Assembly (NCBI RefSeq): GCF_902652985.1
Contig: NC_047026.1
Location: forward strand, 31,248,001 to 31,312,000
Direction: 5' to 3'
DNA from: Pecten maximus
Taxonomy: Eukaryota
Length of the DNA: 64,000 bases
This document shows positions 26,349 through 63,729 of the stretch, in pieces. Every line of letters begins with the position of its first letter. Position 1 is the stretch's first letter. The position numbers were made by a program, and so were the translations under genes. The notes under the pieces are model-generated. The model saw only the letters and a list, made by a program, of their open reading frames with translations. It searched no databases and was not told the DNA's origin.

Positions 26349-29300
26349 TTATGGTTCGTCGTAAAGAGCAGGAGGAGGAGGAGCATTTGCTTGAACTGAA
26401 GGTAGGGATTCATAATATATTGGAGGGGAATCACAAGAAAGCGGGACCGGTTGATGATGCTGGACATCGGGATGATAACCTGGTAGGATACTTTGCTGTC
26501 CGTGAGGCATCCACTGTGTGTGTCCTGTATCTGACGACTGTTGGATAATCCCACGTGACTGGCGAAGTGGCGGCAGGTGATGCGGAGGGGCATGTGGATA
26601 ATGACCTAAATGACAGATGAAGTAAAGAATAAACACTGTCTATGTACCATTGGACCCTGTTACGTCGATGAACAAATAACATAGGTCAGTATGTTATTAT
26701 AGAATAAAAAAAAACATAAACTATTTTTTAATACTTCACAATAGTATATAACAATAGCGAAATTTATACAATTCTTAATCAATCTTTGTCAATTAATTGG
26801 ATTTTATGAGACATTATAATTACATGTACATGTACTTGAATACACAATACTTCCTAAAATAAGTATGCGTTAAATTAATTTAGCGTTATGATATAAGACA
26901 GTGCTATATAACATTTATATTTGTGTTTCACACAATTCGAGTAGTAAAACAACTTATCACTGAATACTTACTTATACTGGTTAACATAGAAGTTCTTTTG
27001 TAGCCATAGTTTCACTTCACATCACACACACAAAAAAACGAATGAAATGTTCAGTAAGATAATTATTCTGACCTTGAAATGCTGGATATGTCGGTGTAGC
27101 ATTTAAAATCTGACCAGGGTGGGTCTGGTTACTTGTCCTGTTTTTGTAATAGCAACATACGGCGACGATGATAGCTATGGCGACGAAGAGTGCAAAACCA
27201 AGTACACTGCCAACGACTATGGCCACACTGTAAAGCCAACATTTACATAGTTGACATGCCGTATCGGTATAATAATACAGTACATAGTAATATCATGTGG
27301 CATATAGATACATATATTTCCATTTGCTCTGCATTGTCACTCTACCAAGCAAAATGGAAAGTTATCAGATCATAACATTATTCTCATTGGTGTTGGTGTT
27401 GTCTGATGCCACTATATCAGGTGTATGTTTGACGTCAAGACAATTCATGCGACTGGACTTAAAAAAACCGTTGATCAACGCAGCTTGCAATGATTTATGT
27501 AGTTCTCTTGTATAAAAGATGAAAATCACCAAAGTGGAATATATTGATTAAATTGTTAATATATGTTATATAGGCATCTTATACCTCAAGGTCCTCAAAG
27601 GTCCTCAAGAAGGAAGAACTATCCATAGTTATGTGTATAATGGGACCTAGCTCAGTAGCTACTCATCAGTAGGCAGCTTACAAATCTTGATAATTGGATT
27701 TCAGTTCTAGACAATTTTACAAAGATATAGCACGGGAGTATGACAAATTAATACAAACAATAACCTTTATTACTGCAATATACACTACACTTACGCGGCA
27801 TTGTCGTCTGATACTGGGACCTCTGTCGTTGTTGTGGATTCACAACACTCAGATGCACAACAACCCTGGTAACAGTAGCCTACATACGATGTCATAAAGT
27901 AATGGTAGTCATAGTGGTAGCATATAGTGCCTGTCATACCTGGAACATATTCAAATAGAAATAATCAGTATAAAACTGCATCTTTATACCAAACTACAAT
28001 TGTATGACCGATATAATTCATCCTTTAGGTCTTCCTCTCCTCGGCTAGACAATGTCACCAAAGCAATTTCATTTATTAACGCTAAGATAAAGAGGATTTC
28101 TTCTTTTTGAATAAAACATTAAGATATTCTGACATAACGAAAAATATCTCAGGTACAGGGCATATGTCAGAGTAGGAATGAAATTTATTTTGGATTCGTA
28201 TTTTTTTCTTTTCAAACAGACTGAAAGTAGTTTTGTAACCATGCATGAAAGAAATTATCACTAATGGCGAAAATATGTGTTTTAGAAAAAAGTGTTTATT
28301 TGTATAAACATGACACTGATCAAAGGATATAATAACATTGACCTAGCATTGAAATTTGTTGAATAATCGTTATTAACTGTTCTGTCGAGGTACTCTTAAA
28401 GTTAATTATATGTGAAACAATTGTATAAAAATGTCGTAATGTCCCAGTTGATGCGATATTTTGAAGGACGTATGCCCATTTTCACGATTTCCAGCGACAG
28501 ATGTCGAGTGCTGATGGAAAAATTAACCACACAAGGCTATGAGAGAAGCAGGTTGAAGGTCATAGAAAAGTTTTATGGTCTGGTCGACGTCGTGATCACC
28601 TTTGGAAGTATTCTATTTCATTGTGCGATGTCAGACATGTTCGATGTTTGTTGATACATCAAGTGGTTCTGTTTTCACCACCGTACTTGTAACTTAACTT
28701 GTAACTTATCTAGATTTGTATGGCGGGTGTCGTCGATTTGTCACATATATATATATGGTGGGTGTCGTCGATTTTTCATAGGTTTGTATGGTGGGTGTCG
28801 TCGATTTGACATAGGTTTGTATGGTGGGTGTCGTCGATTTGTCATAGATATATATATGGTGGGTGTCGTCGATTTGACATACACACATATATATATATAT
28901 GGTGAGTGTCGTCGATTTGACATAGATTTGTATGGTGGGTGTTGTCGATTTGACATAGGTTTGTATGGTGGGTGTTGTCGATTTGACATAGATTTGTATG
29001 GTGGGTGTCGTCGATTTGACATAGATTTGTATGGTTGATGGCGTCTATGAAGCAGAAGACGCTTAACCTTCCGGAACACCTGGTCTTATTCTCTTTGTAC
29101 TTTAGCAATGGTTTTCATGCAAATCATTAGTTTGGTGAAGATTTTACCCCCCGTTTTATCGACTTTGAGTTAGAATTATGAAACAGCTGTGTGGTGTCCC
29201 TTACATCACTGACGTGTCCAATAATGGTGAAACAGCTGTGTGGTGTCCCTTACATCACTGACGAGTCCAATAATGGTGAAACAGCTGTGTTATGTCCCTT

Positions 29301-30552
29301 ACATCACTGACGAGTCCTAGAAGGACAAACAGTTGTATGGTTTGGTTTATTTTGTTTAACGCCCTTTTCACAGCCAGGGTCATTTACATCTTCGCTAGCC
29401 AAGGCTTCTGATTACGTTACACTCCGCGAACCCTTGGCAGATATAGGCGTCAGTTCTGGCCCTCTAGCGGTGATTCGAAATTACCACCCTTCACGCATGA
29501 AATTTTCGACCAATCAAAACAAGCGTTACCGATTTACTTCATCGGTGATGTTTACAAACACACATCGAGGTTTGGTGTCATTTCGATGAGATATGTGATC
29601 AATGACTTATATGAATTGATCAAACACTGCGAATGTTCCCCCAAAGATTGTGATTTTTGTATTTAGGTAAAATGCCATGACATAGTCGGCAATGTAGCTA
29701 TGTACTGGGTGCCGCATTTTTTGTTTACTGCGAAACCAAGCCAGAATGTAAAACGCGATTTGATTGGGTGCCCTGGGATTCCAGGGCGCGACGGTTTGAA
29801 CACGACTATATCCGCCAAGGGTTCGTGGAGTGTAACGTAATCAGAAGCCTTGGCTAGCGAAGATGGGTCATTTAAGGACGTGCCTGGTTTTGGAGGTGGG
29901 GGGAAAGCAGGAATACCCGGAGAAAAACCACCGATCTATGGTCAGTACCAAGCAATTGCCCAACATGAGTTTCGAACTCGCAACCCAGAGATGGAGTGAT
30001 GATAAAGTGGCGGGACACCTTAACCACTCGGCCTCCGCGGCCCAACTGTATGGCGTCCCTTACATCACTGACGAGCCCTAGAAGAGCGAAACGGATGTAT
30101 CGTGTCCCTAACATCACCGACGAGTCCGAGAGGGCGAAACAGCTTTGTGGTGTAGCTCAATCATTTACTAAATTTATGTTCAAAGGTGATATTTACTTCA
30201 GAGCCGTTGTGAATCTTTTGAAGATGTACAGTTATCATGATATGAACTGAAAGCGAATTTCCTACACTGGCGTTTGCCCAGATTAAATACATTATAAGAA
30301 GAGGTCTGGGCAAACGTAATAGATTCATACACGTCTCAACACTATAGAGGCAGACTAAAATAAACCCGAGCCTTTTCCACTGAGTATCAAACACCATAGT
30401 CACAGAAGACTCGGACTGAAGGCGCAGATGAACATATGATACCGGACAACGACAGTTGCCATATTATTTTCGATAAGTATATTTCACAATTGTTTGCTCT
30501 TACCTGGGATCAACAACGTAAGTACCAAACCAATGGTATGACCGGGGGCCAT
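26349..30552 (-). CDS. CYYR1/Shisa-like (WBP1/VOPP1 group) single-pass membrane protein, 4 exons, 201 aa
   Basis: Exons (minus) 30552-30504, 27939-27795, 27227-27073, 26605-26349 (606 nt, phase-consistent). Signal-like MAPGHTIGLVLTLLIPG, Cys/Tyr-rich ectodomain ICYHYDYHYFMTSYVGYCYQGCCASECC, TM AIVVGSVLGFALFVAIAIIVAVCC, Pro/Gln-rich tail with PPIY (PPxY). The first exon is the least certain. Confidence 0.85.
28430..29170 (+). mobile_element. Decayed 3' end of a Penelope-like (Naiad-type, RT-terminal) retroelement
   Basis: Peptide SQLMRY...DRCRVLMEKLTTQGYERSRLKVIEKFYG...MSDMF* resembles the C-terminus of mollusc RT-terminal PLEs, followed by the 3' motif gggtgtcgtcg...gaagacgcttaaccttccggaacacctgg. 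Assignment by recognition. Confidence 0.55.
28708..29035. repeat. 33-bp minisatellite (about 9-10 copies)
   Basis: Unit atttgtatggtgggtgtcgtcgatttgacatag. Confidence 0.9.
29338..30043 (-). mobile_element. tRNA-derived SINE with V-domain-like core, interrupted by a MITE
   Basis: Minus strand: head gggccgcggaggccgagtggttaagg (A box), gagttcgaaac (B box), core ggtttttctccgggtattcctgctttcc, tail ...ggcgttaaacaaaataaaccaaacca. Confidence 0.8.
29387..29865. mobile_element. MITE with ~59-bp TIRs and 9-bp TSD (MULE- or AcademH-type)
   Basis: TIR catcttcgctagccaaggcttctgattacgttacactcc... / ...ggagtgtaacgtaatcagaagccttggctagcgaagatg; exact TSD ggtcattta at 29378-29386 and 29866-29874. Confidence 0.92.
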
Positions 30553-30999
30553 CTTGTAACGTTATTTGTCACCGTTAGCTACTCTATTCAATATACAGCA
30601 CACAAAAGAACTAGCACACCATCGCGCGCCTATTGTTTCACACACATTACCGATCTATATATAATATACAGGTATGATTTATACCCGTATACAAAGTATA
30701 TACACTGTGTATTTAAAGTTTTATTCGGGAGAAGAATTGCTGTATTATTCCATCTAAAGCGTCGTCTACGAAAAAAAAAGAAAGTTATTGGACATTGGTT
30801 ACAAATGGAATATGATTATTACGATAGGTTAAAAAGTATTCCATGTAAAATATGATAGAAATAATTCAATACTATCTGGCCGGCAAGAGGGCTGTGAATC
30901 ACATCTGATAGCTGATGTCTTTTGCAGTGGTGGGTGATCTGTTTTGGCTTAAAGAATTGTTCACTACGCTTAGAATTTCTTATACATAAAAACACGCCG

Positions 31000-31200
31000 A
31001 AGATGAAAGTGTTATGGTCGAAATCATTGTCTCAGCTGAGTACATTGTATATTCTATTTCCTTATGCGATATCAAGTCAGACGTTTTTGAAGTTGAACAG
31101 AAGTCGCTCTCTATTTCGGAGTATCTGGTCTAATGAAGCAGAAGACGATTACTCTTCCGGAACCCCGGAATTAAAGTCTTGGTTTATGGGTTATATGTTC
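31000..31200 (+). mobile_element. Second decayed 3' fragment of the same Penelope-like family
   Basis: aaagtgttatggtcga (K.YGR) ... gaagcagaagacgattactcttccggaacccc matches the motif at 29048-29083. Confidence 0.45.
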
Positions 31201-32674
31201 GTTTATTGTCAGTATTCTTTGTTTTTTAAACAAACGTGGACTTTTTATTGTTGTTTGGATGTTTGTGAAGGCAACCGCTATCTCATAGAATTGGATATCG
31301 GCGTTATCCTTTGGTCTGTAGCCTGTAATGTCGTATATACCCCACGTTAAATTTCCTGTGTAATGCAGTTGCATATTGATTACGAAATATAGTAATATAA
31401 TATATACAGCATCTGTTAGTAACATATTTAAATGTGCTATTAATTTGTGTATCTGATGTAAATCGTTAGATACAGTCTTGTATATGTATCGTAGAGGACC
31501 AGACAATAATGATCCATGATGTATATTGATTTACAGACGACTGTAAACACTTGGTACCTGGTAATTTTAAAAGTCACACCAAAGCTCCAGTTATTACAAA
31601 GATCTGTGGATACTAACCGATTGAGATATATTCTCAATCATTCTTACAAACTTTCACGATCAGAATATTTCTTGAATTTCATATTTCCCTAATAAATCCA
31701 ATTACGTTTTTTGCAAAATTTATGTTTTTGGTGAATTGTTAATCTGTAGACCAGTTTGGAGATAAATTCATGTAAGGTAAACTGATATACATGTAGTGGG
31801 AGATGAAGTCATTACATGTTAAAGCCAGTATAAGATAGCAGAGTCCGATAAAGTTTTATCAGGAAAAAATACACAACGCGGCGCGTCAGCACTTCTTGAA
31901 TAGACACGGGATGTTTTACTGAGAAAAGCTGCGCACATCAGCAAAAACGAACGCATGGTGCATGGTTGAGCTATCAAATGACAGCCGATCATCTCCAATT
32001 TTAACCTGAACATTTTTCATTACCCATATTAGCAAGCCTCGTGAAATGGTCAATGCCACCACTAAAAAGTCTGTCCGAGTTTCTTCTGTCAACGTACAGA
32101 TAGCTATATTTAATGTCCAGGTACTACTAGGAATTTCAGTTAAGTGCTTGATGACAAGGTACACATTATTTAACAATCTTACAGTTACATCCTGGGAAGG
32201 TCAAGGGCGCGTTAGCTATTATGGTAGGTTAAACCGACTAAAATCCGGTTCACTATTTATTCTATCTCGAAGAAAGTTATTTTCAACGAAAAGAATCGCC
32301 CGAACGACCAGTCATTTCCATTCTATCTTTGTCGGAAACATTGAATTCCTAAGATAAATGTTAAGATGGCCATAAGTCCATATTTGGTCAGAACAGAAAC
32401 AATATCGGGAATAAATCCTTATAGTGTTTTCATTCTTGAACCAAGTGCCAGGAAATATTGATACCTGCGCGTGGTAAAAGTCGCTTTACATCGTATTTGT
32501 TAAGTTCCGTGAGATCAACCTTTTCATGTTATGCTATTGTATTTGTTTACAAGTGATATCTATGTATTGATTTCCTGGAATACCACTGACATAATACTGT
32601 GAGAGTACACTCAAATTTAGGCGCATAACTGAATTCAAACAAGATAAGATATAAGCTCAATGATGAATTGGCGC

Positions 32675-34490
32675 ACTCGCAATACACTCGCAATACACTC
32701 ACAATACACTCACAATACACCCATAATACACCCATAATACACCCACAATACACCCATAATACACTCACAATACACCCACAATACACTCACAATACACTCA
32801 CAATACACTCACAATACACCCACAATACACCCACAATACACTCACAATACACCCACAATACACTCACAATACACTCACAATACACCCACAATACACTCAC
32901 AATACACTCACAATACACCCACAATACACTCACAATACACCCACAATACACTCACAATACACCCACAATACACCCACAATACACCCACAATACACTCACA
33001 ATACACTCACAATACACTCACAATACCCTCACAATACACTCACAATACACCCACAATACACCCACAATACACTCACAATACACTCACAATACACTCACAA
33101 TACACCCACAATACACCCACAATACACCCACAATACACCCACAATACACCCACAATACACTCACAACACCCACAAACCCCACAAGACCGCACAAACACTC
33201 ACAAACACCACAAGACACCACAAGACACCCACAAGACACCCACAAACAACCACAAGACACGCACAAGACACCACAAGACACGCACAAGACCCCACAACAC
33301 CACAAGTACACACCCACAAGACACCACAAACACGCACAAGACACTACAAGACACCACAAACACGCACAAGACACCCACAAGACACGCACAAGACACGCAC
33401 AAGACACCACAAGACACCCACAAGACACCACCACAAGACACGCACAAGACACGCACAAGACACCCACAAGACACCACAATACACCCACAAGACACGCACA
33501 AGACACGCACAAACACCCACAATACACCCACAATACACCACAATACACCACAAACACCACAATACCCACAAATACCCACAATACACCACCACAAACCCAC
33601 AATACACGCACAATACACCCACATCCACAGTACACTCACAAACACTCCACAGACACCCACAAGACACCCACCTCACAAGACACCCCACAACCACTCACAA
33701 TACCCACAAGACACCACAATACACCCACAATACACCCACAATACACTCACAATACACTCACAATACACCCACAATACACCCCAAACCCCACAATACACGC
33801 ACAAACACTCACAACACCACAACCCAATACAATACACTCACAAACCCACAACACCACAAACACCCCAATCCCACAGATACATCAATACACGCCACATACA
33901 CAACCACATACAACACTCACAATACACCACAATCAATCCTCACAATACACCCACATACACCCACAATACACCCACATACACGCACAATACAACCCACAAA
34001 CACCCACAATACACACACAATACACCCAACATACACCACAGACAATACACTCACAATACCAACACCACAATACACCACAACAAATACACTCACTCACCCA
34101 ATACACCCAAAGACAGCACAACGACAACAGCAAGACACCCCACGCACAAGACACCCACAAGACACCCACAAGACACGCACAAGACACCCACACAAGACAC
34201 GCACAAGACACGCACAAGACACGCACAAGACACCCACACCAATACACCACAATACACCACAATACACTACACTCACAATACACTCACAATACACCCACAA
34301 TACACCCACAATACACCCATAATACACCCACAATACACCCACAATACACTCACAATACACTCACAATACACTCACAATACACTCACAATACACTCACAAT
34401 ACACCCACAATACACTCACAATACACCCACAATACACTCACAATACACTCCAATACACCCACAATACACTCACAATACACTCACAATACA
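32675..34490. repeat. 11-bp minisatellite (CACAATACACY)n with a central CACAAGACAC variant and a scrambled core
   Basis: Direct reading; source of the 612-aa low-complexity ORF. Confidence 0.95.
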
Positions 34491-35861
34491 CGTTTCATCG
34501 TCCTAACCATAAACACATAAACACAGATAACCCAACCTACCATTTTTATATACACCTCATCTCTTTGATAATATAATATGTCCTATGTAATTAACACTAT
34601 TGGATGACAATGTGTCCCAAATGGATATAAAATACAGCGGTGTACTTTTACAGTGCAATTAAACTGAAATACGTTGATGAAAGCTATAGTATGACAGAAC
34701 ATCAGAATGAATAATTAAATATTGATTTTTCTAAATATAGTTCCAATACTGATAAGTAAACAACATCAACTATAAATAAAATCAATTATGAAAGCAATTG
34801 ATTGGAACCTATTCCATTTGTGTATTCAGTGGCAGCTAAATGAAACTCTGGTTGTTGACAAAACAAAATGTGTCTATAAATAACGCATTATACACATATT
34901 TACATATTTACAGAGACTGGCTTATGTGTGCTGTGGGAACCCGTTTGTTTACAGGTTGTGTTGAGATTACATTGGTGTACACCCAAGGATGACATTTTTA
35001 TAGGAAACGACAGCTCACGAGACCAGGTAACTAGACGCAGGAGAATTAAGCAGGTAAGTCGGGTACACAGTGTTTACAACCAAGTGATTGGTATGCATTT
35101 TAAATCGCGTATTTTGCTCGAGTGTGTGAACAATATTTTAAATGAGATGGAAATTCTCCTGTACTGCCCATCCAGAGAACTCTAGAGAACTACCACAAGG
35201 ACCCAGAAAGTGATGAAATGGTAGGGAAGTCGCCTAGGAATTCCTTCAATCGCAAGGAAAACCGCAACATATTTTGATGTGATGGTAGGATTGTCGCTAG
35301 GGTATAGTGTGAGTGGTAAGGGTATTCCTCGTCTATATAATTGTTGTTAGCAGATCAGCAATGTTAGCGGACATCTATAATTCATAAGTCGTCTGCCATT
35401 TACTCTTAGTTTGCTCAAAACCTTCATATTGACTATAACATTAAAACGGATCAATCACTGAAAGGCATAGTATAACATAAAACCTTTCCCCTGTCCATCT
35501 GGTAGACAGTAGAATTGTTATACTCTCTCAGGAAGACAATAATACAAGGTGATTTACACAGTCATTCAAGTCACTCAACAATAACATTCGTCCGTCATTT
35601 CAATTGTACCCGACTACCAGGCTTAAACGATGTGTAATATATATTAAATATTTTATGGTATACATACAAATAATGTAGCAAAAACAAATCGGTAAACCTG
35701 GCTCCACACTAGATTCTAGGTATTGGCAATTCTAAAATTAAGTCAGCAGAATTTGGTGTTGTGTTGTGTAACTGTATCACAATTCTGGTGGGTCGAGCAA
35801 ACAATACATACTGACGTTGTTAACATATATGGCACCTATACAAAAATGAGTTCGATACAAC

Positions 35862-36383
35862 ACCTCATACAGATGTTTTGTCCTTCTAAGACTCGTCAGT
35901 GATGTTAGGGACATAATAAAGCTGTTTCGTCCTTCTAGGACTCAACAATGACGTTAGTGACATCATACAGCTGTTTTGTCCTTCTGTGATGTTAGGGACA
36001 TCATAAAGCTGTTTCGTCCTTCTAGGACTCATCAGTGATGTTAGGGACATCATACAGCTGTTTCGTCCTTCTAGGACTCATCAGTGATGTTAGGGACATC
36101 ATACAGCTGTTTCGTCCTTCTAGGACTCATCAGTGATGTTAGGGACATCATACAGCTGTTTCGTCCTTCTAGGACTCATCAGTGATGTTAGGGATACCAT
36201 AAAGCTGTTGTCCTTCTAGGACTCGTCAGTGATGTTAGGGACATCATAAAGCTGTTTCGTCCTTCTAGGACTCAACAATGACGTTAGTGACACAATACAG
36301 CTGTTGTCCTTCTAAGACTCATCAGTGATGTTAGGGACATCATACAGCTGTTTTGTCCTTGTAGGACTCGTCAGTGACGCTAA
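35862..36383 (-). ncRNA. Tandem array of 11 minimal hammerhead ribozymes (49-nt unit); three consecutive perfect units at 36047-36193
   Basis: Minus-strand unit: ACAUCA-CUGAUGA-GUCC-UAGAA-GGAC-GAAAC-AGCU-GUA^UGAUGU-CCCUA. It has the canonical CUGANGA/GAAA core, a 4-bp stem II, a 6-bp stem I (ACAUCA/UGAUGU), an NUH triplet GUA and a palindromic stem III. Confidence 0.9.
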
Positions 36384-37479
36384 TGGTTTAAAGTGATATG
36401 GGTATGTTGTTTTAAATTATTGAGATATTAAGTTAACCAGGCGTTGGTGTTCGACTACGTCATGTTGTTTTGTAATGCCTAATTAAGCCCTACTGCACAA
36501 AGCAACGGCGAAGAAAGAATGTCCCCTGTTATTGGAATTATGTGGCAGAATAGCGGGAAACATCAACAGAAGAACGCTAATCTGGAAAAAAACTACAAAT
36601 GAAAAAAAACGTGAAATTATGCTTTCTAAAATATATAATGTTCTCTTAACGAGAGAAGGAACATGTTTGTTTTGTGTTGTCATCTTAAATGATATCGTTT
36701 TGTAAGGGAACGTCGCGTGTCGGTTATTGGCCCCAAAACAGGTCTTTGTTTGTTAACATCACATTCGCCACGTGGCGTTTTCCCTTTTAAATATACAGTA
36801 CATAAATTAAGATAGACATCGTTACTTTATCTCCCCTAACTGTAAATATTTACCGATCGGTTATCAAGAACTTACCAGAATGTGTTGAACTTCTGCGGTG
36901 ACAATATGGACTCCACATGCTATATAGTAATAAAACAATTTTCTAGTGATGATCAATTATTAGATTTAAACAAATGATAGCTGAAATAGTGTAATTTGTC
37001 TCGCGTTTTTGGCAGCACACATTTCATATTAAATTGTGCTGTGTGTAGCAGGATTAATGGGATGTACAATTGTACGACAAAAATATACGCCAATAGTAGT
37101 CAACATCTCTGGCGAAGTTAAAACCCATTAACAGTTTTCTTTATAGTTTCACCTGGTGTTTCCCTTTATTTATTGGATTGTGTTTCTAATAGATTTGTAT
37201 ATACTGTATTACTGGAATAGAATTATCTGTAGAAGGTACATTGACAACAGATCTAGCCTACAGTTATAAGGTGTCATTGTCTGACCCGAATTTCGTCAAT
37301 AGGAAAGCATTACCGAATTTAAGCGAGATGTTGTTGTGAAGTCCGATAATGCTTCCCGATGGAACATTACCAGTTATGTCCTAAGGTTAAGAAATATTGA
37401 TGAGACGGGGTTCCAAATCAAGGGCAATAATTGCATAATACATGAAAAATATTGATTTGCATGACAAAATGTCTATATT

Positions 37480-38010
37480 GCCACGCATGATATACTGTCA
37501 TATTGATATGCATGATATACTGTCATATTGCCACGCATGATATACTGTCATATTGATATGCATGATATACTGTTATATTGATGCGCATGACAAACTGCTG
37601 TATTCAATTTGTTTATTTTAGCTTTGGGCTTTACAGCTGATCAGTACATATAACAATTAACATTTTACAATTGTCAGGCATGACATACTTTTTTTAGTAC
37701 AACGTACTGTTATATCGCCAAGCATGACATGACACTATTGCATTGTCACACACGAGAAACTGTTATATCGTCACGCATGGCATGTATACTATTATATCGA
37801 CACGCATGACATGTATACTATTATATTGTCACGCATGACATGTATACTATTATATTGTCACGCATGACATGTATACTATTATATTGTCACGCATGACATG
37901 TATACTATTATATTGTCACGCATGACATGTATACTATTATATTGTCACGCATGACATGTATACTATTATATTGTCACGCATGACATGTATACTATTATAT
38001 TGTCACGCAT
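37480..38010. repeat. 29-bp minisatellite plus related degenerate 25-bp units
   Basis: Unit catgacatgtatactattatattgtcacg, about 8 copies at 37776-38010. Confidence 0.9.
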
Positions 38011-41073: not shown

Positions 41074-41885
41074 ACGTGTACCTCCACTAACACCATCAGT
41101 CATGTGATGTACGTGTACCTCCACTAACACCATCAGTCATGTGATGTACGTGTACATGTACTAACACCATCAGTCATGTGATGTACGTGTACATCTACTA
41201 ACACCATCAGTCATGTGATGTACGTGTACCTCTACTTACACCATTAGTCATGTGATGTACGTACATCTACTGACACCATCGGTCATGTGATGTACGTGTA
41301 CCTCTACTAACACCATTAGTCATGTGATGTACGTGTACCTCTACTAACACCATCAGTCATGTAATGTACGTGTACATCTACTAACACCATTAGTCATGTG
41401 ACGTGTACCTCTACTAACACCATCGGTCATGTGATGTACGTGTACCTCTACTAACACCATTAGTCATGTGACGTGTACCTCTACTAACACCATCGGTCAT
41501 GTGATGTACGTGTACCTCTACTAACACCATTAGTCATGTGATGTACGTGTACATCTACTAACACCATTAGTCATGTGATGTACGTGTACCTCTACTAACA
41601 CCATTAGTCATGTGATGTACGTGTACCTCCACTAACACCATCAGTCATGTGATGTACGTGTACATCTACTAACACCATCAGTCATGTAATGTACGTGTAC
41701 CTCCACTAACACCATCAGTCATGTGACGTGTACCTCTACTAACACCATTAGTCATGTGATGTACGTGTACCTCCACTAACACCATTAGTCATGTGATGTA
41801 CGTGTACCTCCACTAACACCATCAGTCATGTGATGTACGTGTACCTCTACTGACATCATCGGTCATGTGATGTACGTGTACCTCT
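41074..41885. repeat. 37-bp minisatellite with degenerate flanks (about 40820-42360)
   Basis: Unit cgtgtacctctactaacaccattagtcatgtgatgta, about 22 copies. Confidence 0.95.
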
Positions 41886-42805
41886 AGGCTAATAACACTA
41901 TCAATGTGTCAGGTATGTGGCCACACGTGTGACATACCTCCATATTGTACTAGAGGTATGATATATGTTAACAAGCGTGTTTCTCCATGCAAGTGACATC
42001 AGCAGTCATGTACGACTGTACACACGTGCATATCTAGAATTAGTCAAATGTGTATATGTTGACCAGGTGTACATCCATTAACACCAGCGCGTTTGATCGT
42101 GTGATGTACACACGTGTACCCCCAATAACACATGCAGTGTGTGACATTTATGTGGTGGCCTCGCGTGTAATTCGAATCAGTCATGTGATGTGTGTTGCCT
42201 ACGTTACAATAATACCTGCAGTGTGTGGTGTATGTGTACACCGTGTACTTCCTTCAGCAAGCGTACCGTGTCATATGTACATTTATGTGGCCACGCGTGC
42301 ATCTCGAATCAGTCATGTGATCACATGTGTGGCCCACGTGTACATCCAATAACACTAGCAATGCAGTGTGTGTGTATAAAGATAGGGCTAGAGACTTTAC
42401 TAAGACGTATATGAGCCGCCGGCTGGCATTTAGGTCCTTAAGTTCTATCCAATGAAAACGGAGAAAAAAGGGAATTCCGTCAGAGTTATTATTTCCATTC
42501 TATTTCCGTTTCGCGCGAAAACGGGAATCCCACTTGCGTTGCAAAAACACAAAATGCAGCTGATATACTTTGTTATAGATGAACTTTAAATACCTGTCCT
42601 TAAACTTTAGATATGTCGGTTAATTTTCCATTCAATAACATTAACGGTAAATGTAAATAAAAGTGTTTATTCAACAAAAATATCGACACGAAAGGGGTTT
42701 CCCCGTTTTCTGCCGAACACACTTCCGGTATTTACGTAGTTGTTTACATTCGCTACGAAGATGGCAGATGGGAGTGTTTAGGTCTAACGCATCAAGAAAT
42801 CGTAT

Positions 42806-48591: not shown

Positions 48592-50985
48592 ATCTATCAG
48601 GTATACACCAGTAATACTACTGTCTATCAGGTATACACACCAGTAATCCTACTGTCTATCAGGTATACACACCAGTAATCCTACTGTGTCCTCTATCAGG
48701 TATACTCACCAATAATCCTACTGTCTATCAGGTATACACACCAGTAATCCTACTGTCTATCAGGTATACACACCAGTAATCCTACTGTCTATACACACCA
48801 GTAATCCTACTGTCTATCGGGTATACACACCAGTTATCCTACTGTCTATACACACCAGTAATCCTACTGTCTATACACACCAGTAATCCTACTGTGTCCT
48901 CTATCAGGTATACACACCAGTAATCCTACTGTCTATCAGGTATACACACCAGCAATCCTACTGCCTATACACACCAGTAATCCTACTGTCTATACACACC
49001 AGTAATCCTACTGTCTATCGGGTATACACACCAGTAATCCTACTGTCTATCAGGTATACACACCAGTAATCCTACTGTCTATACACACCAGTAATATTAC
49101 TGTCTATACACACCAGTAATCCTACTGTCTATCAGGTATACACACCAGTAATCCTACTGTCTATACACACCAATAATCCTACTGTCCATACACACCAGTA
49201 ATCCTACTGTCTATACACACCAATAATCCTACTGTCCATACACACCAGTAATCCTACTGTCTATCAGGTATACACACCAGTAATCCTACTGTCTATCAGG
49301 TATACACACCAGTAATCTTACTGTCTATCAGGTATACACACCAGTAATCCTACTGTCTATACACACCAGTAATCCTACTGTCTATCAGGTATACACACCA
49401 GTAATCCTACTGTGTCCTCTATCAGGTATACACACCAGTAATCTTACTGTCTATCAGGTATACACACCAGTAATCCTACTGTCTATCAGGTATACACACC
49501 AGTAATCCTACTGTCTATACACACCAGTAATCCTACTTTCTATACACACCAGTAATCCTACTGTCTATACACACCAGTAATCCTACTGTCTATCAGGTAT
49601 ACACACCAGTTATCCTACTGTCTATACACACCAGTAATCCTACTGTCTATCAGGTATACACACCCGTAATCCTACTGTCTATCAGATATACACACCAGTA
49701 ACCCTACTGTCTATCAGGTATACACACCAGTAATCCTACTGTTTATCGGGTATACACACCAGTAATCCTACTGTCTATCAGGTATACACACCAGTGATCC
49801 TACTGTCTATCAGGTATACACACCAGTAATCCTACTGTCTATCAGGTATACACACCAGTAATCCTACTGTTTATCGGGTATACACACCAGTTATCCTACT
49901 GTCTATACACACCAGTAATCCTACTGTGTATCATGTATACACACCAGTAATCCTACTGTCTATCAGGTATACACACCAGTAATCCTACTGTCTATACACA
50001 CCAGTAATCCTACTGTCTATCAGGTATACACACCAGTAATCCTACTGTCTATCAGGTATAATCACCAGTAATCCTACTGTCTATACACACCAGTAATCCT
50101 ACTGTCTATACACACCAGTAATCCTACTGTCTATCAGGTATACACACCAGTAATCCTACTGTCTATCAGGTATAATCACCAGTAATCCTACTGTCTATTA
50201 GGTATACACACCAGTTATCCTACTGTCTATCAGGTAAACACACCAGTAATCCTACTGTTTATACACACCAGTAATCCTACTGTCTATCAGGTATACACAC
50301 CAGTAATCCTACTGTCTATACACACCAGTAATCCTACTGTCTATTAGGTATACACACCAGTTATCCTACTGTCTATCAGGTATACACACCAGTAATCCTA
50401 CTGTCTATACACACCAGTAATCCTACTGTCTATCAGGTATACACACCAGTAATCCTACTGTCTATCAGGTATACACACCAGTAATCCTACTGTCTATCAG
50501 GTATACACACCAGTAATCCTACTGTCTATCAGGTATACACACCAGTAATCCTACTGTCTATCAGATATACACACCAGTAATCCTACTGTCTATCAGGTAT
50601 ACACACCAGTAATCCTACTGTCTATCAGGTATACACACCAGTAATCCTACTGTCTATCAGATATACACACAAGTAATCCTACTGTGTCCTCTATCAGGTA
50701 TACACACCAGTAATCCTACTGTCTATCAGGTATGCACACCAGTAATCCTACTGTCTATACACACCAGTGATCCTACTGTCTATACACACCAGTAATCTTA
50801 CTGTCTATCAGGTATACACACCAGTTATCCTACTGTCTATGCACACCAGTAATCCTACTGTCTATCAGGTATACACACCAGTAATCCTACTGTCTATCAG
50901 GTATACACACCAGTAATCCTACTGTCTATCAGGTATACTCACCAGTAATCCTACTGTCTATACACACCAGTTATCCTACTATCTC
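48592..50985. repeat. 32/25-bp minisatellite
   Basis: Unit acacaccagtaatcctactgtctatcaggtat, with a variant lacking caggtat. Confidence 0.95.
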
Positions 50986-51799: not shown

Positions 51800-54700
51800 G
51801 TGTCCTGTTTCGGTGTGGTGTGTCCTTTGTGGACGTGGTGTGTCCTGTGTCAGTTTAGTGTGTACTGTGTCGGTTTGGTGTGTCCTTTGTGGGTTTGATG
51901 AGTCCTTTGTGGGTTTGGTGTGTCCATTGTGGGTTTGGTGTGTCCATTGTGGGTTTGGTGTGTCCTTTGTAGGTATGGTGTGTCCTTTGTGGGTTTGGTG
52001 TGTCCTTTGTGGATTTGGTGTGTCCTTTGTGGGTTTGGTGTGTCCTGTGTCGGTGGGATGTGTCCATTGTGGGTTTGGTGTGTCCATTCGTGGGTTTGGT
52101 GTGTCCTTTGTAGGTATTGTGTGTCCTTTGTGGGTTTGGTGTGTCCTGTGTCGGTGGGATGTGTCCTTTGTGGGTTTGATGTGTCCTTTGTAGGTTTGGT
52201 GTGTCCTTTGTGGGTTTTTTGTGTGTCCATTGTGGGTTTGTTGTGTCCTTTGTGGGTTTTTTGTGTGTCCATTGTGTCCTTTGTGGGTTTGGTGTGTCCT
52301 GTGTCGGTTTGGTGTGCCCTTTGTGGGTTTGGTGTGTCCTTTGTGGGTTTGGTGTGTCCATTGTGGGTTTGGTGTGTCCTGTGTCGGTTTGGTGTGCCCT
52401 TTGTGGGTTTGGTGTGTCCTGTGTCGGTTTGGTGTGCCCTTTGTGGGTTTGGTGTGTCCTGTGTCGGTTTGGTGTGCCCTTGGTGGGTTTGGTGTGCCCT
52501 TTGTGGGTTTGATGTGTCCTTTGTGGGTTTGCTGTGTCCATTGTGGGTTTGTTGTGTCCTTTGTGGGGTTTTTGTGTGTCCATTGTGGGTTTGGTGTGTC
52601 CATTGTGGGTTTGGTGTATCCTTTGTGGGTTTGGTGTGCCCTTTGTGGGTTTGGTGTGCCCTTTGTGGGTTTGGTGTGTCCTTTGTGGGTTTGGTGTGTC
52701 CTGTGTCGTTGGGATGTGTCCTTTGTGGGTTTGATGTGTTCTTTGTGGGTTTGGTGTGTCCTGTGTGGGTTTGGTGTGTCCTTTGTTGGTTTGGTGTGTC
52801 CTGTGTCGGTGGGATGTGTCCATTGTGGGTTTGGTGTGTCCTTTGTGGGTTTGGTGTGTCCTTTGTGGGTTTGGTGTGTCCTTTGTTGGTTTGGTGTGTC
52901 CTGTGTCGGTGTGGTGTGTCCTTTGTGGGTATGATGTGTCCTTTGTGAGTTTGGTGTGTCCTTTGTGGGTTTGGTGTGCCCTTTGTGGGTTTGGTGTGTC
53001 CATTGTGGGTTTGGTGTGTCCTTTGTAGGTATGGTGTGTCCTTTGTGGGTTTGGTGTGTCCTGTGTCGGTGGGATGTGTCCTTTGTGGGTTTGATGTGTC
53101 CTTTGTAGGTTTGGTGTGTCCTTTGTGGGTTTTTTGTGTGTCCATTGTGGGTTTGTTGTGTCCTTTGTGGGTTTTTTGTGTGTCCATTGTGTCCTTTGTG
53201 GGTTTGGTGTGTCCTGTGTCGGTTTGGTGTGCCCTTTGTGGGTTTGGTGTGTCCTTTGTGGGTTTGGTATGTCCATTGTGGGTTTGGTGTGTCCTGTGTC
53301 GGTTTGGTGTGCCCTTTGTGGGTTTGGTGTGTCCTGTGTCGGTTTGGTGTGCCCTTTGTGGGTTTGGTGTATCCTGTGTCGGTTTGGTGTGCCCTTGGTG
53401 GGTTTGGTGTGCCCTTTGTGGGTTTGATGTGTCCTTTGTGGGTTTGGTGTGTCCATTGTGGGTTTGGTGTGTCCTTTGTGGGTTTGGTGTGTCCTTTGTG
53501 GGTTTGTTGTGTCCTTTGTGGGTTTTTTGTGTGTCCATTGTGGGTTTGGTGTGTCCATTGTGGGGTTGTTGTATCCTTTGTGGGTTTGGTGTGCCCTTTG
53601 TGGGTTTGGTTTGCCCTTTGTGGGTTTGGTGTGTCCTTTGTGGGTTTGGTGTGTCCTGTGTCGGTGGGATGTGTCCTTTGTGGGTTTGATGTGTCCTTTG
53701 TGGGTTGGGTGTGTCCTGTGTGGGTTTGGTGTGTCCTTTGTTGGTTTGGTGTGTCCTGTGTCGGTGGGATGTGTCCATTGTGGGTTTGGTGTGTCCTTTG
53801 TTGGTTTGGTGTGTCCTGTGTCGGTGGGATGTGTCCATTGTGGGTTTGGTGTGTCCTTTGTGAGTTTGGTGTGTCCTTTGTTGGTTTGGTGTGTCCTGTG
53901 TCGGTGTGGTGTGTCCTTTGTGGGTATGGTGTGTCCTTTGTGAGTTTGGTGTGCCTTTTGTGGGTTTGGTGTGCCCTTTGTGGGTTTGGTGTGACCATTG
54001 TGGGTTTGGTGTGTCCTGTGTCGGTGGGATGTGTCCTTTGTGGGTTTGGTGTGTCCTGTGTCGGTGGGATGTGTCCTTTGTGGGGTTGGTGTGTCCTTTG
54101 TGGGTTTGGTGTGTCCTTTGTGGGTTTGGTGTGTCCTGTGTCGGTGGGATGTGTCTTTTGTGGGTTTGGTGTGTCTAGTGTCGGTGGGATGTGTCCATTG
54201 TGGGTTTGGTGTGTCCTGTGTCGGTGGGATGTGTCCTTTGTGGGTTTGATGTGTCCTTTGTGGGTTTGGTGTGTCCTGTGTGGGTTTGGTGTGTCCTTTG
54301 TGGGTTTGGTGTGTCCTGTGTCGGTGGGATGTGTCCTTTGTGGGTTTGGTGTGTCCTTTGTGGGGTTTGGTGTGTCCCATTGTGGGTTTGGTGTGCCCTT
54401 TGTGGTTTGGTGTGTCCTGTGTCGGTGGGATGTGTCCTTTGTGGGTTTGGTGTACCCTTTGTGGGTTTGGTGTGTCCTTTGTGGGTTTGGTGTGTCCTGT
54501 GTCGGTGGGATGTGTCCTTTGTGGGTTTAGTGTGTCCATTGTGGGTTTGGTGTGTCCTTTGTGAGTATGGTGTACCCTTTGTGGGTTTGGTGTGTCCTGT
54601 GTCGGTGGGATGTGTCCTTTGTGGGTTTGGTGTGTCCTGTGTCGGTGGGATGTGTCCTTTGTGGGTTTAGTGTGTCCATTGTGGGTTTGGTATGTCCTTT

Positions 54701-55175
54701 GTGGGTTTGGTGTGTCCTTTGTGGGTGTGGTGTGTCCTTTGTGGGTATAGTGTACCCTTTGTGGGTTTGGTGTGTCCATTGTGGGTTTGGTGTGTCCTTT
54801 GTAGGTTTGGTGTGTCTTTTGTGGGTTTGGTGTGTCCTGTGTCGGTTTGGTGTGCCCTTTGTGGGTTTGGTGTACCCTTTGTGGGTTTGGTGTGTCCTTT
54901 GTGGGTTTGGTGTGTCCTTTGTGGGTTTGGTGTGTCCTGTGTCGGTTTGGTGTGCCCTTTGTGGGTTTGGTGTACCCTGTACTAACAGTTCATTCCTCTA
55001 TAGTTCTTTACCGGAGAAGTTCCAATATACGTATAATAACTGGTTTACTAGCTTTACGTTTTCAGTTTAACACTTAGCTAAGATTGTTGGGTTTGGTGTG
55101 CCCTTTGTGGGTTTCCTTTGTGGGTTTGGTGTGTCCTGGGTCGGTGGGATGTGCCCTTTGTGGGTTTGGCGTGTC
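51800..55175. repeat. 20-bp GT-rich minisatellite (about 3.3 kb)
   Basis: Unit gtgtcctttgtgggtttggt with variants; source of the 974, 741 and 662-aa spurious ORFs. Confidence 0.95.
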
Positions 55176-63000: not shown

Positions 63001-63729
63001 GTACCGCGCGGATATGCTGTTCCCGCGGAGTAAGAACGAGCACCGCGCGGATATGCTCTTCCCGCGGAGTAAGAACGAGTATTGCGCGGATATGCTCTTC
63101 CCGCGGAGTAAGAACGAGCACCGCGCGGATATGCTCTACCTGCGGAGTAAGAACAAACACTGCCTCGATATGTGTACTAATAAACAACAAACACGCGTTA
63201 AAAAGATCAGTCTATAACACGTCTGGCATCACGGCTCCTATCTTTATATTGATTATAAGACACATACTATGTACAACGAAGGCCATGTTGATATCACAGC
63301 TCGTATGAGATCCGGTACACATGGTCGTCCCACGATACGTACAATGGAATCAACCGGAGTCACACTTCCGTCTTAGATAAGTTCTAATGTATATATAACA
63401 GAAAAAAAAATCCTGTAAATCTAACACGCAAACGGAGAGGTCGTCCAACTTACGTTAGCATTCGGGAAATATGTGTCTTGGTCCCTTGTTTAATTAAATA
63501 AAGCATACAATATCCTCACATAATTCATATATATTTATACATGAATTCCGTGGACATTGTATATTTGATGGTAAATGACCGTCGATATCAGGATGATAGA
63601 ACATTTTCGATGTCTGTGTGTTTACAGGAGAGCTCATACCATCACGGTCCTCGTCGTTTTCATCGGCATTCTCGTCTACATCGCCTTGTTCGAGGACCCT
63701 GTACTCAACCCAGACTACAACAGCAGAAG
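57076..63729 (+). CDS. PTDSS2: Phosphatidylserine synthase 2, first two coding exons; continues beyond the right edge
   Basis: Exons 57076-57203 and 63628-63729, phase-consistent. Translation MAAANSDQEIDELKIHTATAFDWEAEKRRNTNVSDDGTNTFFW/RAHTITVLVVFIGILVYIALFEDPVLNPDYNSRR; DDGTNTFFWRAHT is the recognisable PTDSS2 N-terminal motif. Confidence 0.9.
58070..61817. repeat. 41/45-bp minisatellite in the PTDSS2 intron
   Basis: Unit atacagactgatactatacatactgacggtatacagacaat (period 41; +4 variant). Confidence 0.95.
61824..63160. repeat. 39-bp CpG-rich minisatellite (about 34 copies) in the PTDSS2 intron
   Basis: Unit gagtaagaacgagcaccgcgcggatatgctgttcccgcg. Confidence 0.95.

What the first reader, a model, noticed from the sequence alone, without database searches (positions are those of the whole stretch)
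35862..36383. A minisatellite whose 49-nt unit is itself a hammerhead ribozyme: a candidate minimal retrozyme
Seen: on the minus strand each unit reads ACAUCA CUGAUGA GUCC-UAGAA-GGAC GAAAC AGCU GUA UGAUGU CCCUA, so 44 of 49 nt are ribozyme. There are 11 units; three are perfect (starting 36047, 36096, 36145). Predicted cuts follow GUA at 36053/36052, 36102/36101 and 36151/36150. Known: CUGANGA/GAAA/NUH is the hammerhead core, and metazoan type I hammerheads with a tiny palindromic stem III occur in tandem non-LTR retrozymes and Penelope-like elements, normally in repeats of well over 100 nt. Inference: a read-through transcript would be cut into 49-nt monomers that could circularise, an unusually small self-processing repeat. 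The tandem array could itself derive from rolling-circle reverse transcription of such a circle.
Basis: partly seen in the sequence, partly recalled or inferred. Interest (0 to 1): 0.92.

Follow-up and report, generated by a model that had tools for sequence, protein, structure and literature searches.

The report
Hammerhead ribozyme minisatellite in scallop retroelement
A 49-bp tandem repeat in the king scallop genome really does encode one self-cutting hammerhead RNA per unit, but it is the expanded ribozyme module of a larger, decaying mobile element found all over the genome, not a free-standing 49-nt element.

Summary
Window 35862-36383 holds about 11 units of 49 bp. On the minus strand, three units are perfect type I hammerheads and a fourth is nearly perfect. 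They score 33.9 bits against Rfam Hammerhead_1, whose gathering score is 34. The genome's majority variant, CUGACGAG, scores 35-36.5.

The assembly statistics match Pecten maximus exactly. The genome holds about 9,600 such units in arrays on all the large scaffolds. The scan had already noted this family in 34 other notes on this genome, none followed up.

The "minimal retrozyme" reading is only partly supported.
- Arrays sit at a fixed junction between two conserved arms, a left arm of at least 194 nt and a right arm of about 84 nt. These belong to a dispersed element of about 0.33-0.4 kb.
- Copies of that element with one hammerhead, or with none, also exist.
- Resident units decay neutrally: CpG sites are hit hardest, including core G12. 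The core is no better conserved than the linker, and there is no covariation.
- Blocks containing dead units have been duplicated at the DNA level.

Two adjacent intact units fold, as the minimum-energy structure, into a double hammerhead with an 8-bp helix III, while a lone 49-mer misfolds. Cutting of a read-through transcript into 49-nt pieces is therefore plausible but untested.

A 2026 preprint already lists retrozyme families with consensus lengths down to 51 bp. I rate this a new variant of a known kind, of moderate interest.

The parts
35862..36383 (-). 49-bp minisatellite of about 11 units, each encoding one type I hammerhead (44 nt) plus a 5-nt CCCUA linker
   Evidence: TRF period 49, 10.8 copies; row-by-row listing; Rfam matches
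36140..36188 (-). Unit 5, a perfect hammerhead; predicted cut after GUA between 36151 and 36150
   Evidence: Hammerhead_1 33.9 bits at 36145-36188; sequence
36091..36139 (-). Unit 6, a perfect hammerhead; predicted cut between 36102 and 36101
   Evidence: Hammerhead_1 33.9 bits at 36096-36139
36042..36090 (-). Unit 7, a perfect hammerhead; predicted cut between 36053 and 36052
   Evidence: Hammerhead_1 33.9 bits at 36047-36090
35993..36041 (-). Unit 8: core intact, but G16.2 changed to U (GUA to UUA). It can still supply the core that cuts unit 7 in the double hammerhead
   Evidence: Hammerhead_1 31.0 bits at 35998-36041; sequence
36189..36383 (-). Units 1-4, all with disabled cores: G12 to A, GAAA shortened in two units, and UUGUUGA in unit 3
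   Evidence: pattern mismatches
35862..35992 (-). Units 9-11, disabled: an 11-nt core deletion, UUGUUGA again in unit 10, and G12 to A. Units 9-11 echo units 2-4 at a lag of 330 bp
   Evidence: lag 330 identity 0.67; dead core shared by units 3 and 10
35822..35859 (-). Remnant of the carrier element's right arm, directly downstream of the array
   Evidence: Local alignment to the right-arm consensus scores 32; 0 of 1000 shuffles reach it
36382..36402 (-). Possible remnant of the end of the carrier's left arm (ATCACTTTA..CC..TT); marginal
   Evidence: Score 21; 44 of 1000 shuffles reach it. The full left-arm model does not detect it
29110..29340 (+). A second carrier copy in the window: a left-arm-like stretch, then 49-bp hammerhead-derived units that are dead (GUG at the cut site, weakened helix II)
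   Evidence: TRF 29179-29317, period 49, 2.8 copies; sequence
30040..30220 (+). Probable continuation of that second carrier: two diverged hammerhead units and a right-arm-like tail. Inserted elements separate it from the first part
   Evidence: Sequence; pattern hit at 30068-30092. The arm resemblance is judged by eye only

Best explanation
The array is the ribozyme module of a dispersed, non-coding, retrozyme-like element of the king scallop, expanded in place into a minisatellite.

The carrier element is about 0.33-0.4 kb long. It has a left arm of at least 194 nt, then a canonical type I hammerhead, then a right arm of about 84 nt. It is most likely a non-autonomous relative of Penelope-like elements.

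Shown here:
- The ancestral carrier has one hammerhead.
- A 49-bp segment (5-nt linker plus 44-nt ribozyme) was tandemly duplicated. All arrays share the same phase.
- Array length then drifted locus by locus, from 0 or 1 to more than 55 units, with one array of about 14 kb. The drift came largely through DNA-level unequal exchange of single and multi-unit blocks.
- Resident units decay neutrally.

Inferred, not shown:
- This hammerhead has a 2-bp helix III with a palindromic loop, so it needs a partner. Two adjacent units supply that partner in cis and fold into a double hammerhead with an 8-bp helix III.
- A minus-strand read-through transcript would then be cut after each GUA where neighbouring units are intact. 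[quoted passage not shown]
- At this locus only units 5-8 qualify, so at most two or three monomers would be released.
- A host function is not indicated.
For: Ribozyme identity:
- Core and helices are intact in three window units.
- 25 units in 8 other loci pass the Hammerhead_1 gathering score, at 35-36.5 bits against 34.

Family size:
- 959 exact and 9,576 near matches in the genome, with 0 for the controls.

Carrier element:
- The right-arm model lies next to the array's 3' end in at least 20 of 46 loci. The left-arm model lies next to the 5' end in at least 13.
- In 12 of the left-arm loci checked (positions) the array starts 2-6 nt after the left arm. The right-arm junction is modally 3 nt inside the last unit.
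- L063 is a carrier with a single hammerhead, L062 has arms without one, and L060 has one hammerhead plus an insert.
- A genome search with the L063 left side gives 230 first-look candidates. Many start at the same 5' point and others are 5'-shortened.
- The window copy keeps a significant right-arm remnant.

Neutral decay:
- Per-site conservation is flat at 0.88-0.98. The lowest values are at the two CpGs (core N7/G8 and C11.1/G12), though helix I positions 1 and 41 are also low at 0.77 and 0.85. G12 is lost in 20% of units, mostly G to A (14%).
- 43% of 569 units keep the core and 25% keep the core plus all helices.
- Compensatory double changes number 19, against 15-28 for slid partners and 27.9 for shuffles.

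DNA-level growth:
- Within-array identity is 0.904 against 0.862 between arrays.
- Higher-order peaks appear at lags 2-9 in many arrays.
- The dead core UUGUUGA is shared by window units 3 and 10.

Dimer fold:
- The 98-nt dimer's minimum-energy structure is the double hammerhead, at -29.3 kcal/mol with z = -3.9 and 0 of 200 shuffles as good. The 49-mer instead pairs CUG with CAG.

Literature:
- Canonical metazoan hammerheads have exactly this 6/4/2-bp-plus-palindrome layout and cleave as dimers (PMC4209133).
- Mussel retrozymes are 350-390 bp (PMC7229834).
- A Penelope-terminal origin followed by local amplification through unequal crossover has been proposed (10.64898/2026.07.22.740005).

Other support:
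- Penelope-type GIY-YIG domains are abundant, with at least 150 hits, many in open frames of 700-930 aa.
- RNA libraries of the species hold the repeat, including a contig that runs from the array into the left-arm end.
Against: - No cleavage, strand or RNA ends could be seen. All runs were available only as contigs, and a repeat with about 10^4 copies could appear in RNA libraries through DNA carry-over.
- About half of the sampled arrays show no detectable arms. The sample was also chosen by similarity to intact units.
- The carrier was not linked to any reverse-transcriptase-encoding element. No such ORF lies near the sampled arrays.
- No target-site duplications were found.
- The carrier's full extent differs between copies.
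- L062, the copy without a hammerhead, could be read as an empty target site rather than a deletion.
Confidence: 0.68

Rival explanations
1. One reading: the 49-nt unit is itself a minimal retrozyme. Transcripts are cut into 49-nt monomers that circularise. Rolling-circle reverse transcription of such circles creates and spreads the arrays.
For: - The unit is almost entirely ribozyme, and adjacent units fold into a double hammerhead.
- Arrays occur on all the large scaffolds.
- Some arrays contain long runs of identical units, for example G000:C6:21852751-21866428.
- About half of the sampled arrays show no recognisable arms.
Against: - Where arms are detectable, the array always sits at the same junction and in the same unit phase.
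- Single-hammerhead carriers exist.
- Dead units are co-amplified in blocks.
- There is no selection signal on the core in resident units.
- The lone 49-mer is predicted to misfold, with no helix III to hold its ends together.
Confidence: 0.1
2. Inert satellite: the hammerhead is only a fossil of the element the repeat derives from. The arrays are not processed in vivo, or not transcribed on the minus strand, and persist purely by DNA turnover.
For: - Decay is neutral, with the catalytic G12 lost in 20% of units.
- Only 25% of units are fully intact, and 3-4 of 11 at this locus.
- The window is crowded with unrelated minisatellites, giving 28 TRF rows, so the genome expands short repeats readily.
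- No RNA coverage of this locus's flanks appears in two RNA libraries.
- Minimal animal hammerheads cleave poorly in vitro (PMC4209133). Eight of nine Xenopus dimers did not cleave (10.64898/2026.07.22.740005).
Against: - The family consensus is a flawless hammerhead that passes Rfam's threshold.
- RNA libraries contain the repeat with a variant spectrum unlike the genomic one. Dead-core variants C3 to U and G12 to C reach 28-87% of depth in some RNA runs, against about 3% of the sampled genomic units. This argues for real, locus-specific transcripts.
- The double-hammerhead fold is the minimum-energy structure.
Confidence: 0.2
3. Chance resemblance: a satellite unit that merely looks like a hammerhead.
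For: The window units score 0.1 bit below Rfam's gathering score.
Against: - All 11 invariant core positions, three helices, the G10.1-C11.1 pair and the palindromic helix III are present together.
- The majority variant passes the threshold.
- Helix II is letter-for-letter that of the Rfam type I consensus.
- Reversed-pattern controls give 0 hits genome-wide.
Confidence: 0.02

Closest known systems
Metazoan non-LTR retrozymes (coral, mussel, axolotl; PMC7229834) and vertebrate families (preprint 10.64898/2026.07.22.740005)
   Same: - Tandem DNA repeats in which every unit carries a type I hammerhead.
- Low GC, no coding capacity, and many dispersed loci.
- Co-occurrence with Penelope-like elements.
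- A weak palindromic helix III that favours cleavage as a dimer.
- The carrier's size of about 0.33-0.4 kb matches mussel retrozymes (350-390 bp).
   Different: - What is tandemly repeated here is only the 44-nt ribozyme plus 5 nt, with no cargo between ribozymes. The rest of the element stays single-copy as two arms.
- The classical unit range is 150-450 bp. The preprint lists consensus lengths from 51 bp but does not describe those families.
- No circular RNA has been shown here.
Hammerhead-bearing satellite DNAs (newt satellite 2, Dolichopoda pDo500, Schistosoma Sm-alpha)
   Same: A hammerhead embedded in repetitive DNA and transcribed as multimers. The double-hammerhead mechanism was first proposed for newt and ASBVd RNAs (Forster et al. 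1988, cited in PMC4209133). The core and helix II are almost identical (CUGAYGAGUCC...GGACGAAAC).
   Different: Those units are about 330-500 bp. Sm-alpha has a Pol III promoter head, and none was found in the arms here.
Minimal hammerheads of Penelope-like elements (PMC4209133)
   Same: Association with retroelements, and dimer-dependent architecture with a palindromic junction.
   Different: Those lack helix III altogether, have a long helix II (7-8 bp) and a short helix I (4-5 bp), and lie in pseudo-LTRs about 3 kb apart. The scallop motif has the canonical 6/4/2-bp layout.
Tandem-repeat-containing short mobile elements of bivalves (arms flanking an internal minisatellite)
   Same: Short conserved arms flank a variable-length internal array, and the elements are dispersed over all chromosomes. 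This resemblance is recalled from memory and was not checked against a paper here.
   Different: The internal repeat here is a complete ribozyme. Neither terminal inverted repeats nor Helitron ends were seen.

Membership tests
Hammerhead ribozyme type I (Rfam RF00163) | Invariant core CUGANGA ... GAAA ... UH at a three-way junction | tested here: met
   Present in window units 5-7, and in unit 8 apart from 16.2. 43% of 569 sampled units keep it.
Hammerhead ribozyme type I (Rfam RF00163) | Helices I, II and III with open ends at helix I | tested here: met
   Helix I is 6 bp, helix II is 4 bp with G10.1-C11.1, and helix III is 2 bp plus an AGCU loop in cis or 8 bp between neighbours.
Hammerhead ribozyme type I (Rfam RF00163) | Score at or above the curated gathering threshold (34 bits) | tested here: met
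   Met for the family: 25 units in 8 loci score 35-36.5 bits. The window's own CUGAUGAG units score 33.9, which is 0.1 bit short, so the gathering run on the window lists nothing.
Hammerhead ribozyme type I (Rfam RF00163) | Helices supported by compensatory changes among members | tested here: not met
   19 compensatory cells, against 15-28 with slid partners and a mean of 27.9 in within-array shuffles. The copies are too alike and decay neutrally, so this says nothing against the fold.
Hammerhead ribozyme type I (Rfam RF00163) | Site-specific self-cleavage | not testable with these tools
   Only a folding prediction is available.
Metazoan non-LTR retrozyme | Tandem repeats, each unit with a type I hammerhead | tested here: met
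Metazoan non-LTR retrozyme | Unit of roughly 150-450 bp that forms the body of the RNA circle | tested here: not met
   The unit is 49 bp with no sequence beyond the ribozyme and a 5-nt linker. This is close to the 51-bp minimum listed in the 2026 preprint.
Metazoan non-LTR retrozyme | Expression as unit-length linear and circular RNA | tested here: inconclusive
   Two RNA libraries hold 108 and 153 contigs on the array and none on the flanks. Contigs give no strand, ends or size, and DNA carry-over of a 10^4-copy repeat cannot be excluded.
Metazoan non-LTR retrozyme | The repeat unit itself is the mobile entity | tested here: not met
   Arrays are carried at a fixed junction inside a larger element, and copies with one and with zero hammerheads exist.
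Metazoan non-LTR retrozyme | Co-occurrence with Penelope-like elements in the genome | tested here: met
   At least 150 GIY-YIG matches over the cut-off, many in open frames of 700-930 aa. The reverse transcriptase part was not checked, and no physical link to the carrier was found.
Penelope-type minimal hammerhead | No helix III, helix II of 7-8 bp, helix I of 4-5 bp, located in pseudo-LTRs | tested here: not met
   The layout is 6/4/2 bp. No reverse-transcriptase ORF lies near the sampled arrays.
Sm-alpha-like SINE with hammerhead | tRNA-derived Pol III promoter head upstream on the same strand | tested here: not met
   No tRNA was found in 28000-38000. The arm consensus has no A or B box by eye and contains T-runs. 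The tRNA-like heads near arrays (window about 29940-30050; L020) lie on the opposite strand and look like insertions.
Minisatellite (DNA-level tandem repeat) | Unit of 10-100 bp, variable copy number, local homogenisation and block duplication | tested here: met
   Copy numbers range from 0 to more than 55. Within-array identity exceeds between-array identity. Higher-order peaks are present, and a dead core is shared within the window array.

The most novel reading that the evidence does not exclude
Scallop cells contain 49-nt hammerhead-derived RNAs, linear and circular, released from these arrays. They would be the smallest natural self-processed ribozyme circles. Arrays would then grow in a single retrotransposition event: the reverse transcriptase copying the carrier RNA switches by homology onto such a circle, rolls around it, and switches back. 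That would explain arrays that are flanked by arms yet contain long runs of identical units.
Probability: 0.1. Interest if true: 0.85.

Novelty: new variant of a known kind. Interest (0 to 1): 0.45.

Why it matters
Hammerheads in animal satellite DNA have been known since 1987, and retrozymes since 2016-2020. The general class is therefore not new.

What is unusual here is the arrangement. A repeat with no cargo at all sits nested inside a single-copy carrier, so that each ribozyme's obligatory dimer partner lies 49 nt away in cis. This gives a clean natural system of about 10^4 units, with arrays from 1 to several hundred units, for asking three questions:
- Does local duplication of a weak-helix-III hammerhead rescue self-cleavage?
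- How small can a ribozyme-made RNA, or RNA circle, be in vivo?
- How do satellite DNA and retroelements feed each other?

It also marks a sizeable unclassified repeat family in a reference bivalve genome. The genome paper mentions neither hammerheads nor Penelope-like elements (PMC7191990).

Tried and rejected
- **Rfam gathering run on the whole window:** no hit, because the units fall 0.1 bit short. The Hammerhead_3 match (34.7 bits against 48.5) skips a unit and is not a membership.
- **Terminal redundancy between the arm consensuses, and a left-arm start after the window's right arm:** not significant, at 507 of 1000 and 711 of 1000 shuffles. Only L063 shows a 15/16 terminal direct repeat, reached by 7 of 2000 shuffles.
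- **Target-site duplications:** none convincing.
- **Penelope or reverse-transcriptase ORFs next to arrays:** long open frames near arrays are low-complexity or unrelated, and Pfam finds nothing except one NUDIX domain.
- **The 612-aa ORF at 32668-34506:** an 11-bp microsatellite artefact.
- **Scans of metagenome and viral contigs for the unit junction:** 0 hits.
- **Fold of the single-hammerhead carrier L063:1495-1703:** not unusually stable, with z = -1.4, so there is no support for a rod-like circle.
ARAGORN finds none.
- **Supplement of PMC7229834:** no matching mussel hammerhead sequence is held.
- **PMC5785218 (Lünse et al.):** not held in the library.
- **Further genome loci:** The 14-kb array on C6 and the candidate Penelope copies were therefore not inspected.
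- **Gene context of the window locus:** not determined.

Full report
**1. What is there**

Tandem Repeats Finder reports one array at 35865-36377 with period 49, 10.8 copies and 84% matches. A better-matching 96-98-bp higher-order period is also reported. The unit is ACAUCA, CUGAUGA, GUCC-UAGAA-GGAC, GAAAC, AGCU, GUA, UGAUGU, then CCCUA.

- Rows 5-7 (36140-36188, 36091-36139, 36042-36090) are identical and flawless.
- Row 8 (35993-36041) differs only by GUA to UUA.
- The other seven rows carry disabling changes. These are G12 to A, a shortened GAAA, a core reading UUGUUGA, or an 11-nt core deletion.

Rfam's type I hammerhead model matches the three perfect units at 33.9 bits, against a gathering score of 34, and row 8 at 31.0 bits. 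The default gathering run therefore lists nothing for the window.

The layout is a 6-bp helix I, a 4-bp helix II with the G10.1-C11.1 pair, and a 2-bp helix III closed by a palindromic 4-nt loop. Cervera and de la Peña describe exactly this as the canonical metazoan type I hammerhead, whose weak helix III makes it work as a dimer (PMC4209133).

**2. Which genome, and how many**

The window's assembly has 918,306,378 bases in 3,983 scaffolds. The longest scaffold is 60,076,705 bases and C19 is 32,483,354. These are exactly the published figures for Pecten maximus (PMC7191990). That paper mentions neither hammerheads nor Penelope-like elements. No paper in the searched library links hammerhead ribozymes with scallops.

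In the genome, a 32-nt pattern fixing the core, helix II and helix III occurs 959 times. A 33-mer within 3 mismatches occurs 9,576 times. Reversed-pattern controls give 0 for both. The dominant variant is CUGACGAG; the window's CUGAUGAG variant has only 35 exact copies. In 8 other loci, 25 units pass Rfam's gathering score at 35-36.5 bits.

Every apparently solitary match that I fetched turned out to lie in a more degenerate 49-bp array. The scan had already noted this family in 34 first-stage notes on other windows of this genome, none followed up.

**3. The arrays are carried by a larger element**

I collected 46 loci and oriented them on the ribozyme strand. Models built from the flanks find two arms.

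- A right arm of about 84 nt lies directly after the array in at least 20 loci.
- A left arm lies directly before it in at least 13 loci. It was first modelled at 82 nt and later extended to 194 nt.

The junctions are fixed. In 12 of the left-arm loci checked (positions), the array starts 2-6 nt after the left arm, at ACAUCA. The right arm begins about 3 nt inside the nominal last unit, just after GUAUGAUG. The array is thus n x 49 minus about 5 nt, in one phase everywhere.

Three loci show the carrier without an array.

- L063 has a single hammerhead between the arms. The element spans about 1299-1701, roughly 400 bp.
- L060 has one hammerhead plus an unrelated 290-bp insert.
- L062 has the arms joined with no hammerhead.

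A genome search with the left side of L063 gives 230 first-look candidates at 67-85% identity. Many begin at the same query position (198-202) and others at 283-330. This fits a defined 5' end plus 5'-shortened copies.

L063 carries a 15/16 direct repeat at its two ends, reached by 7 of 2000 shuffles. This was not seen in the other sampled copies.

In the window, the downstream flank keeps a significant right-arm remnant at 35822-35859, reached by 0 of 1000 shuffles. The upstream flank keeps only a marginal trace at 36382-36402, reached by 44 of 1000 shuffles.

The arms are much more diverged between loci (about 70-80%) than the ribozyme units are.

**4. How the arrays evolve**

In 569 in-register units from 33 arrays, per-site conservation is flat at 0.88-0.98. 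The lowest values are at the two CpG dinucleotides, at core N7/G8 and at C11.1/G12. Two helix I positions are also low (0.77 and 0.85). The catalytic G12 is changed in 20% of units, mostly to A (14%).

Excluding CpGs, core sites are no better kept than the loop and linker sites. The difference is about 5.5% against 6.5%. This holds even though my unit detection favours the core.

- 43% of units keep the core, and 25% keep the core plus all helices.
- Compensatory double changes number 19. Slid partners give 15-28, and within-array shuffles average 27.9.

There is therefore no sign of selection on resident copies, as expected for dispersed copies of a mobile family. The case for a working ribozyme rests on the consensus.

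Units are more alike within arrays (0.904) than between them (0.862). Many arrays show higher-order peaks at lags of 2-9 units. In the window, units 3 and 10 share the same dead core, with matching neighbours at a lag of 330 bp.

These are signatures of DNA-level unequal exchange that copies dead and live units alike. The window itself holds 28 TRF rows of unrelated minisatellites, so this genome expands short repeats readily.

**5. How it would work as RNA (inferred)**

The 49-nt monomer, in either permutation, folds with CUG of the core paired to CAG of the palindrome, and without helix III.

The 98-nt dimer's minimum-energy structure, which is also its centroid, is a textbook double hammerhead.

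- The two ACAGCUGU palindromes form an 8-bp helix III.
- One helix I is the UGAUGU-CCCUA-ACAUCA hairpin between the units, and the other closes the whole dimer.
- Each helix II stands as its own hairpin.
- The energy is -29.3 kcal/mol, with z = -3.9 and 0 of 200 shuffles as stable.

This is the Forster-Symons dimer mechanism cited for newt and viroid RNAs (PMC4209133, PMC7761336). The difference here is that the partner lies 49 nt away.

My reading is that duplicating the module gave a dispersed single-copy element a partner in cis. At this locus, units 5-8 could yield two or three 49-nt products. Circularisation of such products is possible in principle through RtcB, as shown for 330-350-nt retrozyme RNAs (PMC7229834), but it is not supported by any data here.

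**6. Expression**

Public runs of the same species label hold the repeat, and so does a second organism label. I laid four runs on 35600-36650.

Two RNA libraries give 108 and 153 contigs confined to the array, and none on the unique flanks. One contig continues from the array into a sequence that is the reverse complement of the left-arm end. This places carrier and array on one molecule.

All data are contigs, so strand, ends and size are invisible. A repeat of 10^4 copies could also come from DNA carry-over.

One hint argues against pure carry-over. Dead-core variants (C3 to U; G12 to C) make up 28-87% of depth at their sites in some RNA runs, but about 3% of my genomic units. This rests on single contigs, and there is no DNA run from the same animal. 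If real, it would also fit survival of uncleavable transcripts.

**7. Comparison with what is known**

Classical animal retrozymes are tandem repeats of 150-450 bp. Mussel retrozymes are 350-390 bp, with about 5,000 hammerheads (PMC7229834). The scallop carrier has that size, but what is repeated is only the ribozyme.

A 2026 preprint on vertebrates reports family consensus lengths of 51-972 bp. It proposes that retrozymes arise from terminal parts of 5'-truncated Penelope-like elements and then amplify locally by unequal crossover (10.64898/2026.07.22.740005). That agrees with what I see, and it removes the claim that a unit of about 50 bp is unprecedented.

Penelope-type endonuclease domains are abundant in this genome. 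I could not link any of them to the carrier.

**8. Verdict**

The feature is a real hammerhead minisatellite. It is the expanded ribozyme module of a retrozyme-like carrier, mostly decayed at this locus, and it grows mainly at the DNA level.

It is a new variant of a known kind. The nested, cargo-free arrangement and the cis double hammerhead are worth a bench test. The 49-nt-circle idea remains a low-probability but attractive possibility.

Noticed in passing
window 29110-30220: A second carrier copy on the plus strand. Its hammerhead units (29179-29340 and 30040-30160) are separated by inserted DNA. One insert has inverted ends of about 50 bp (about 29385-29435 and 29815-29870). Next to it is a tRNA-like SINE head on the minus strand (about 29940-30050, with D-arm and T-arm motifs). 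ARAGORN calls no tRNA there.
   Followed up: partly
window 1-64000: The window is packed with unrelated minisatellites (28 TRF rows). Examples: 11 bp x 168 at 32680-34491, which creates a spurious 612-aa ORF; 32 bp x 79 at 48593-50961; 20 bp x 159 at 51800-54973; 41 bp x 86 at 58113-61686; 39 bp x 34 at 61822-63154; and 37 bp x 22 at 41074-41886.
   Followed up: no
G000:C6:21852751-21866428: A very long hammerhead array of about 14 kb with many consecutive perfect units, the largest seen.
   Followed up: no
L058:2406-3100 (G000:C1:35977500-35983500): Part of the left arm plus 4-5 hammerhead units is itself duplicated at a spacing of about 371 bp. This is a higher-order tandem of carrier plus array, reminiscent of classical retrozyme repeats.
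   Followed up: no
window 36113 and 36133, in the RNA runs: In RNA-library contigs, hammerhead units with dead cores (G12 to C; C3 to U) dominate the depth at those sites (28-87%). They are about 3% of the sampled genomic units. Possible causes are locus-specific expression or survival of uncleavable transcripts.
   Followed up: partly
L020 upstream of the array (G000:C6:32027448-32030593): A tRNA-like SINE head on the opposite strand abuts the 5' start of the array, as in the window's second carrier. It looks like an insertion rather than a promoter for the array.
   Followed up: partly
L062:1641-1700: A perfect palindromic insert of about 60 bp interrupts the right arm of the hammerhead-less carrier copy.
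   Followed up: no
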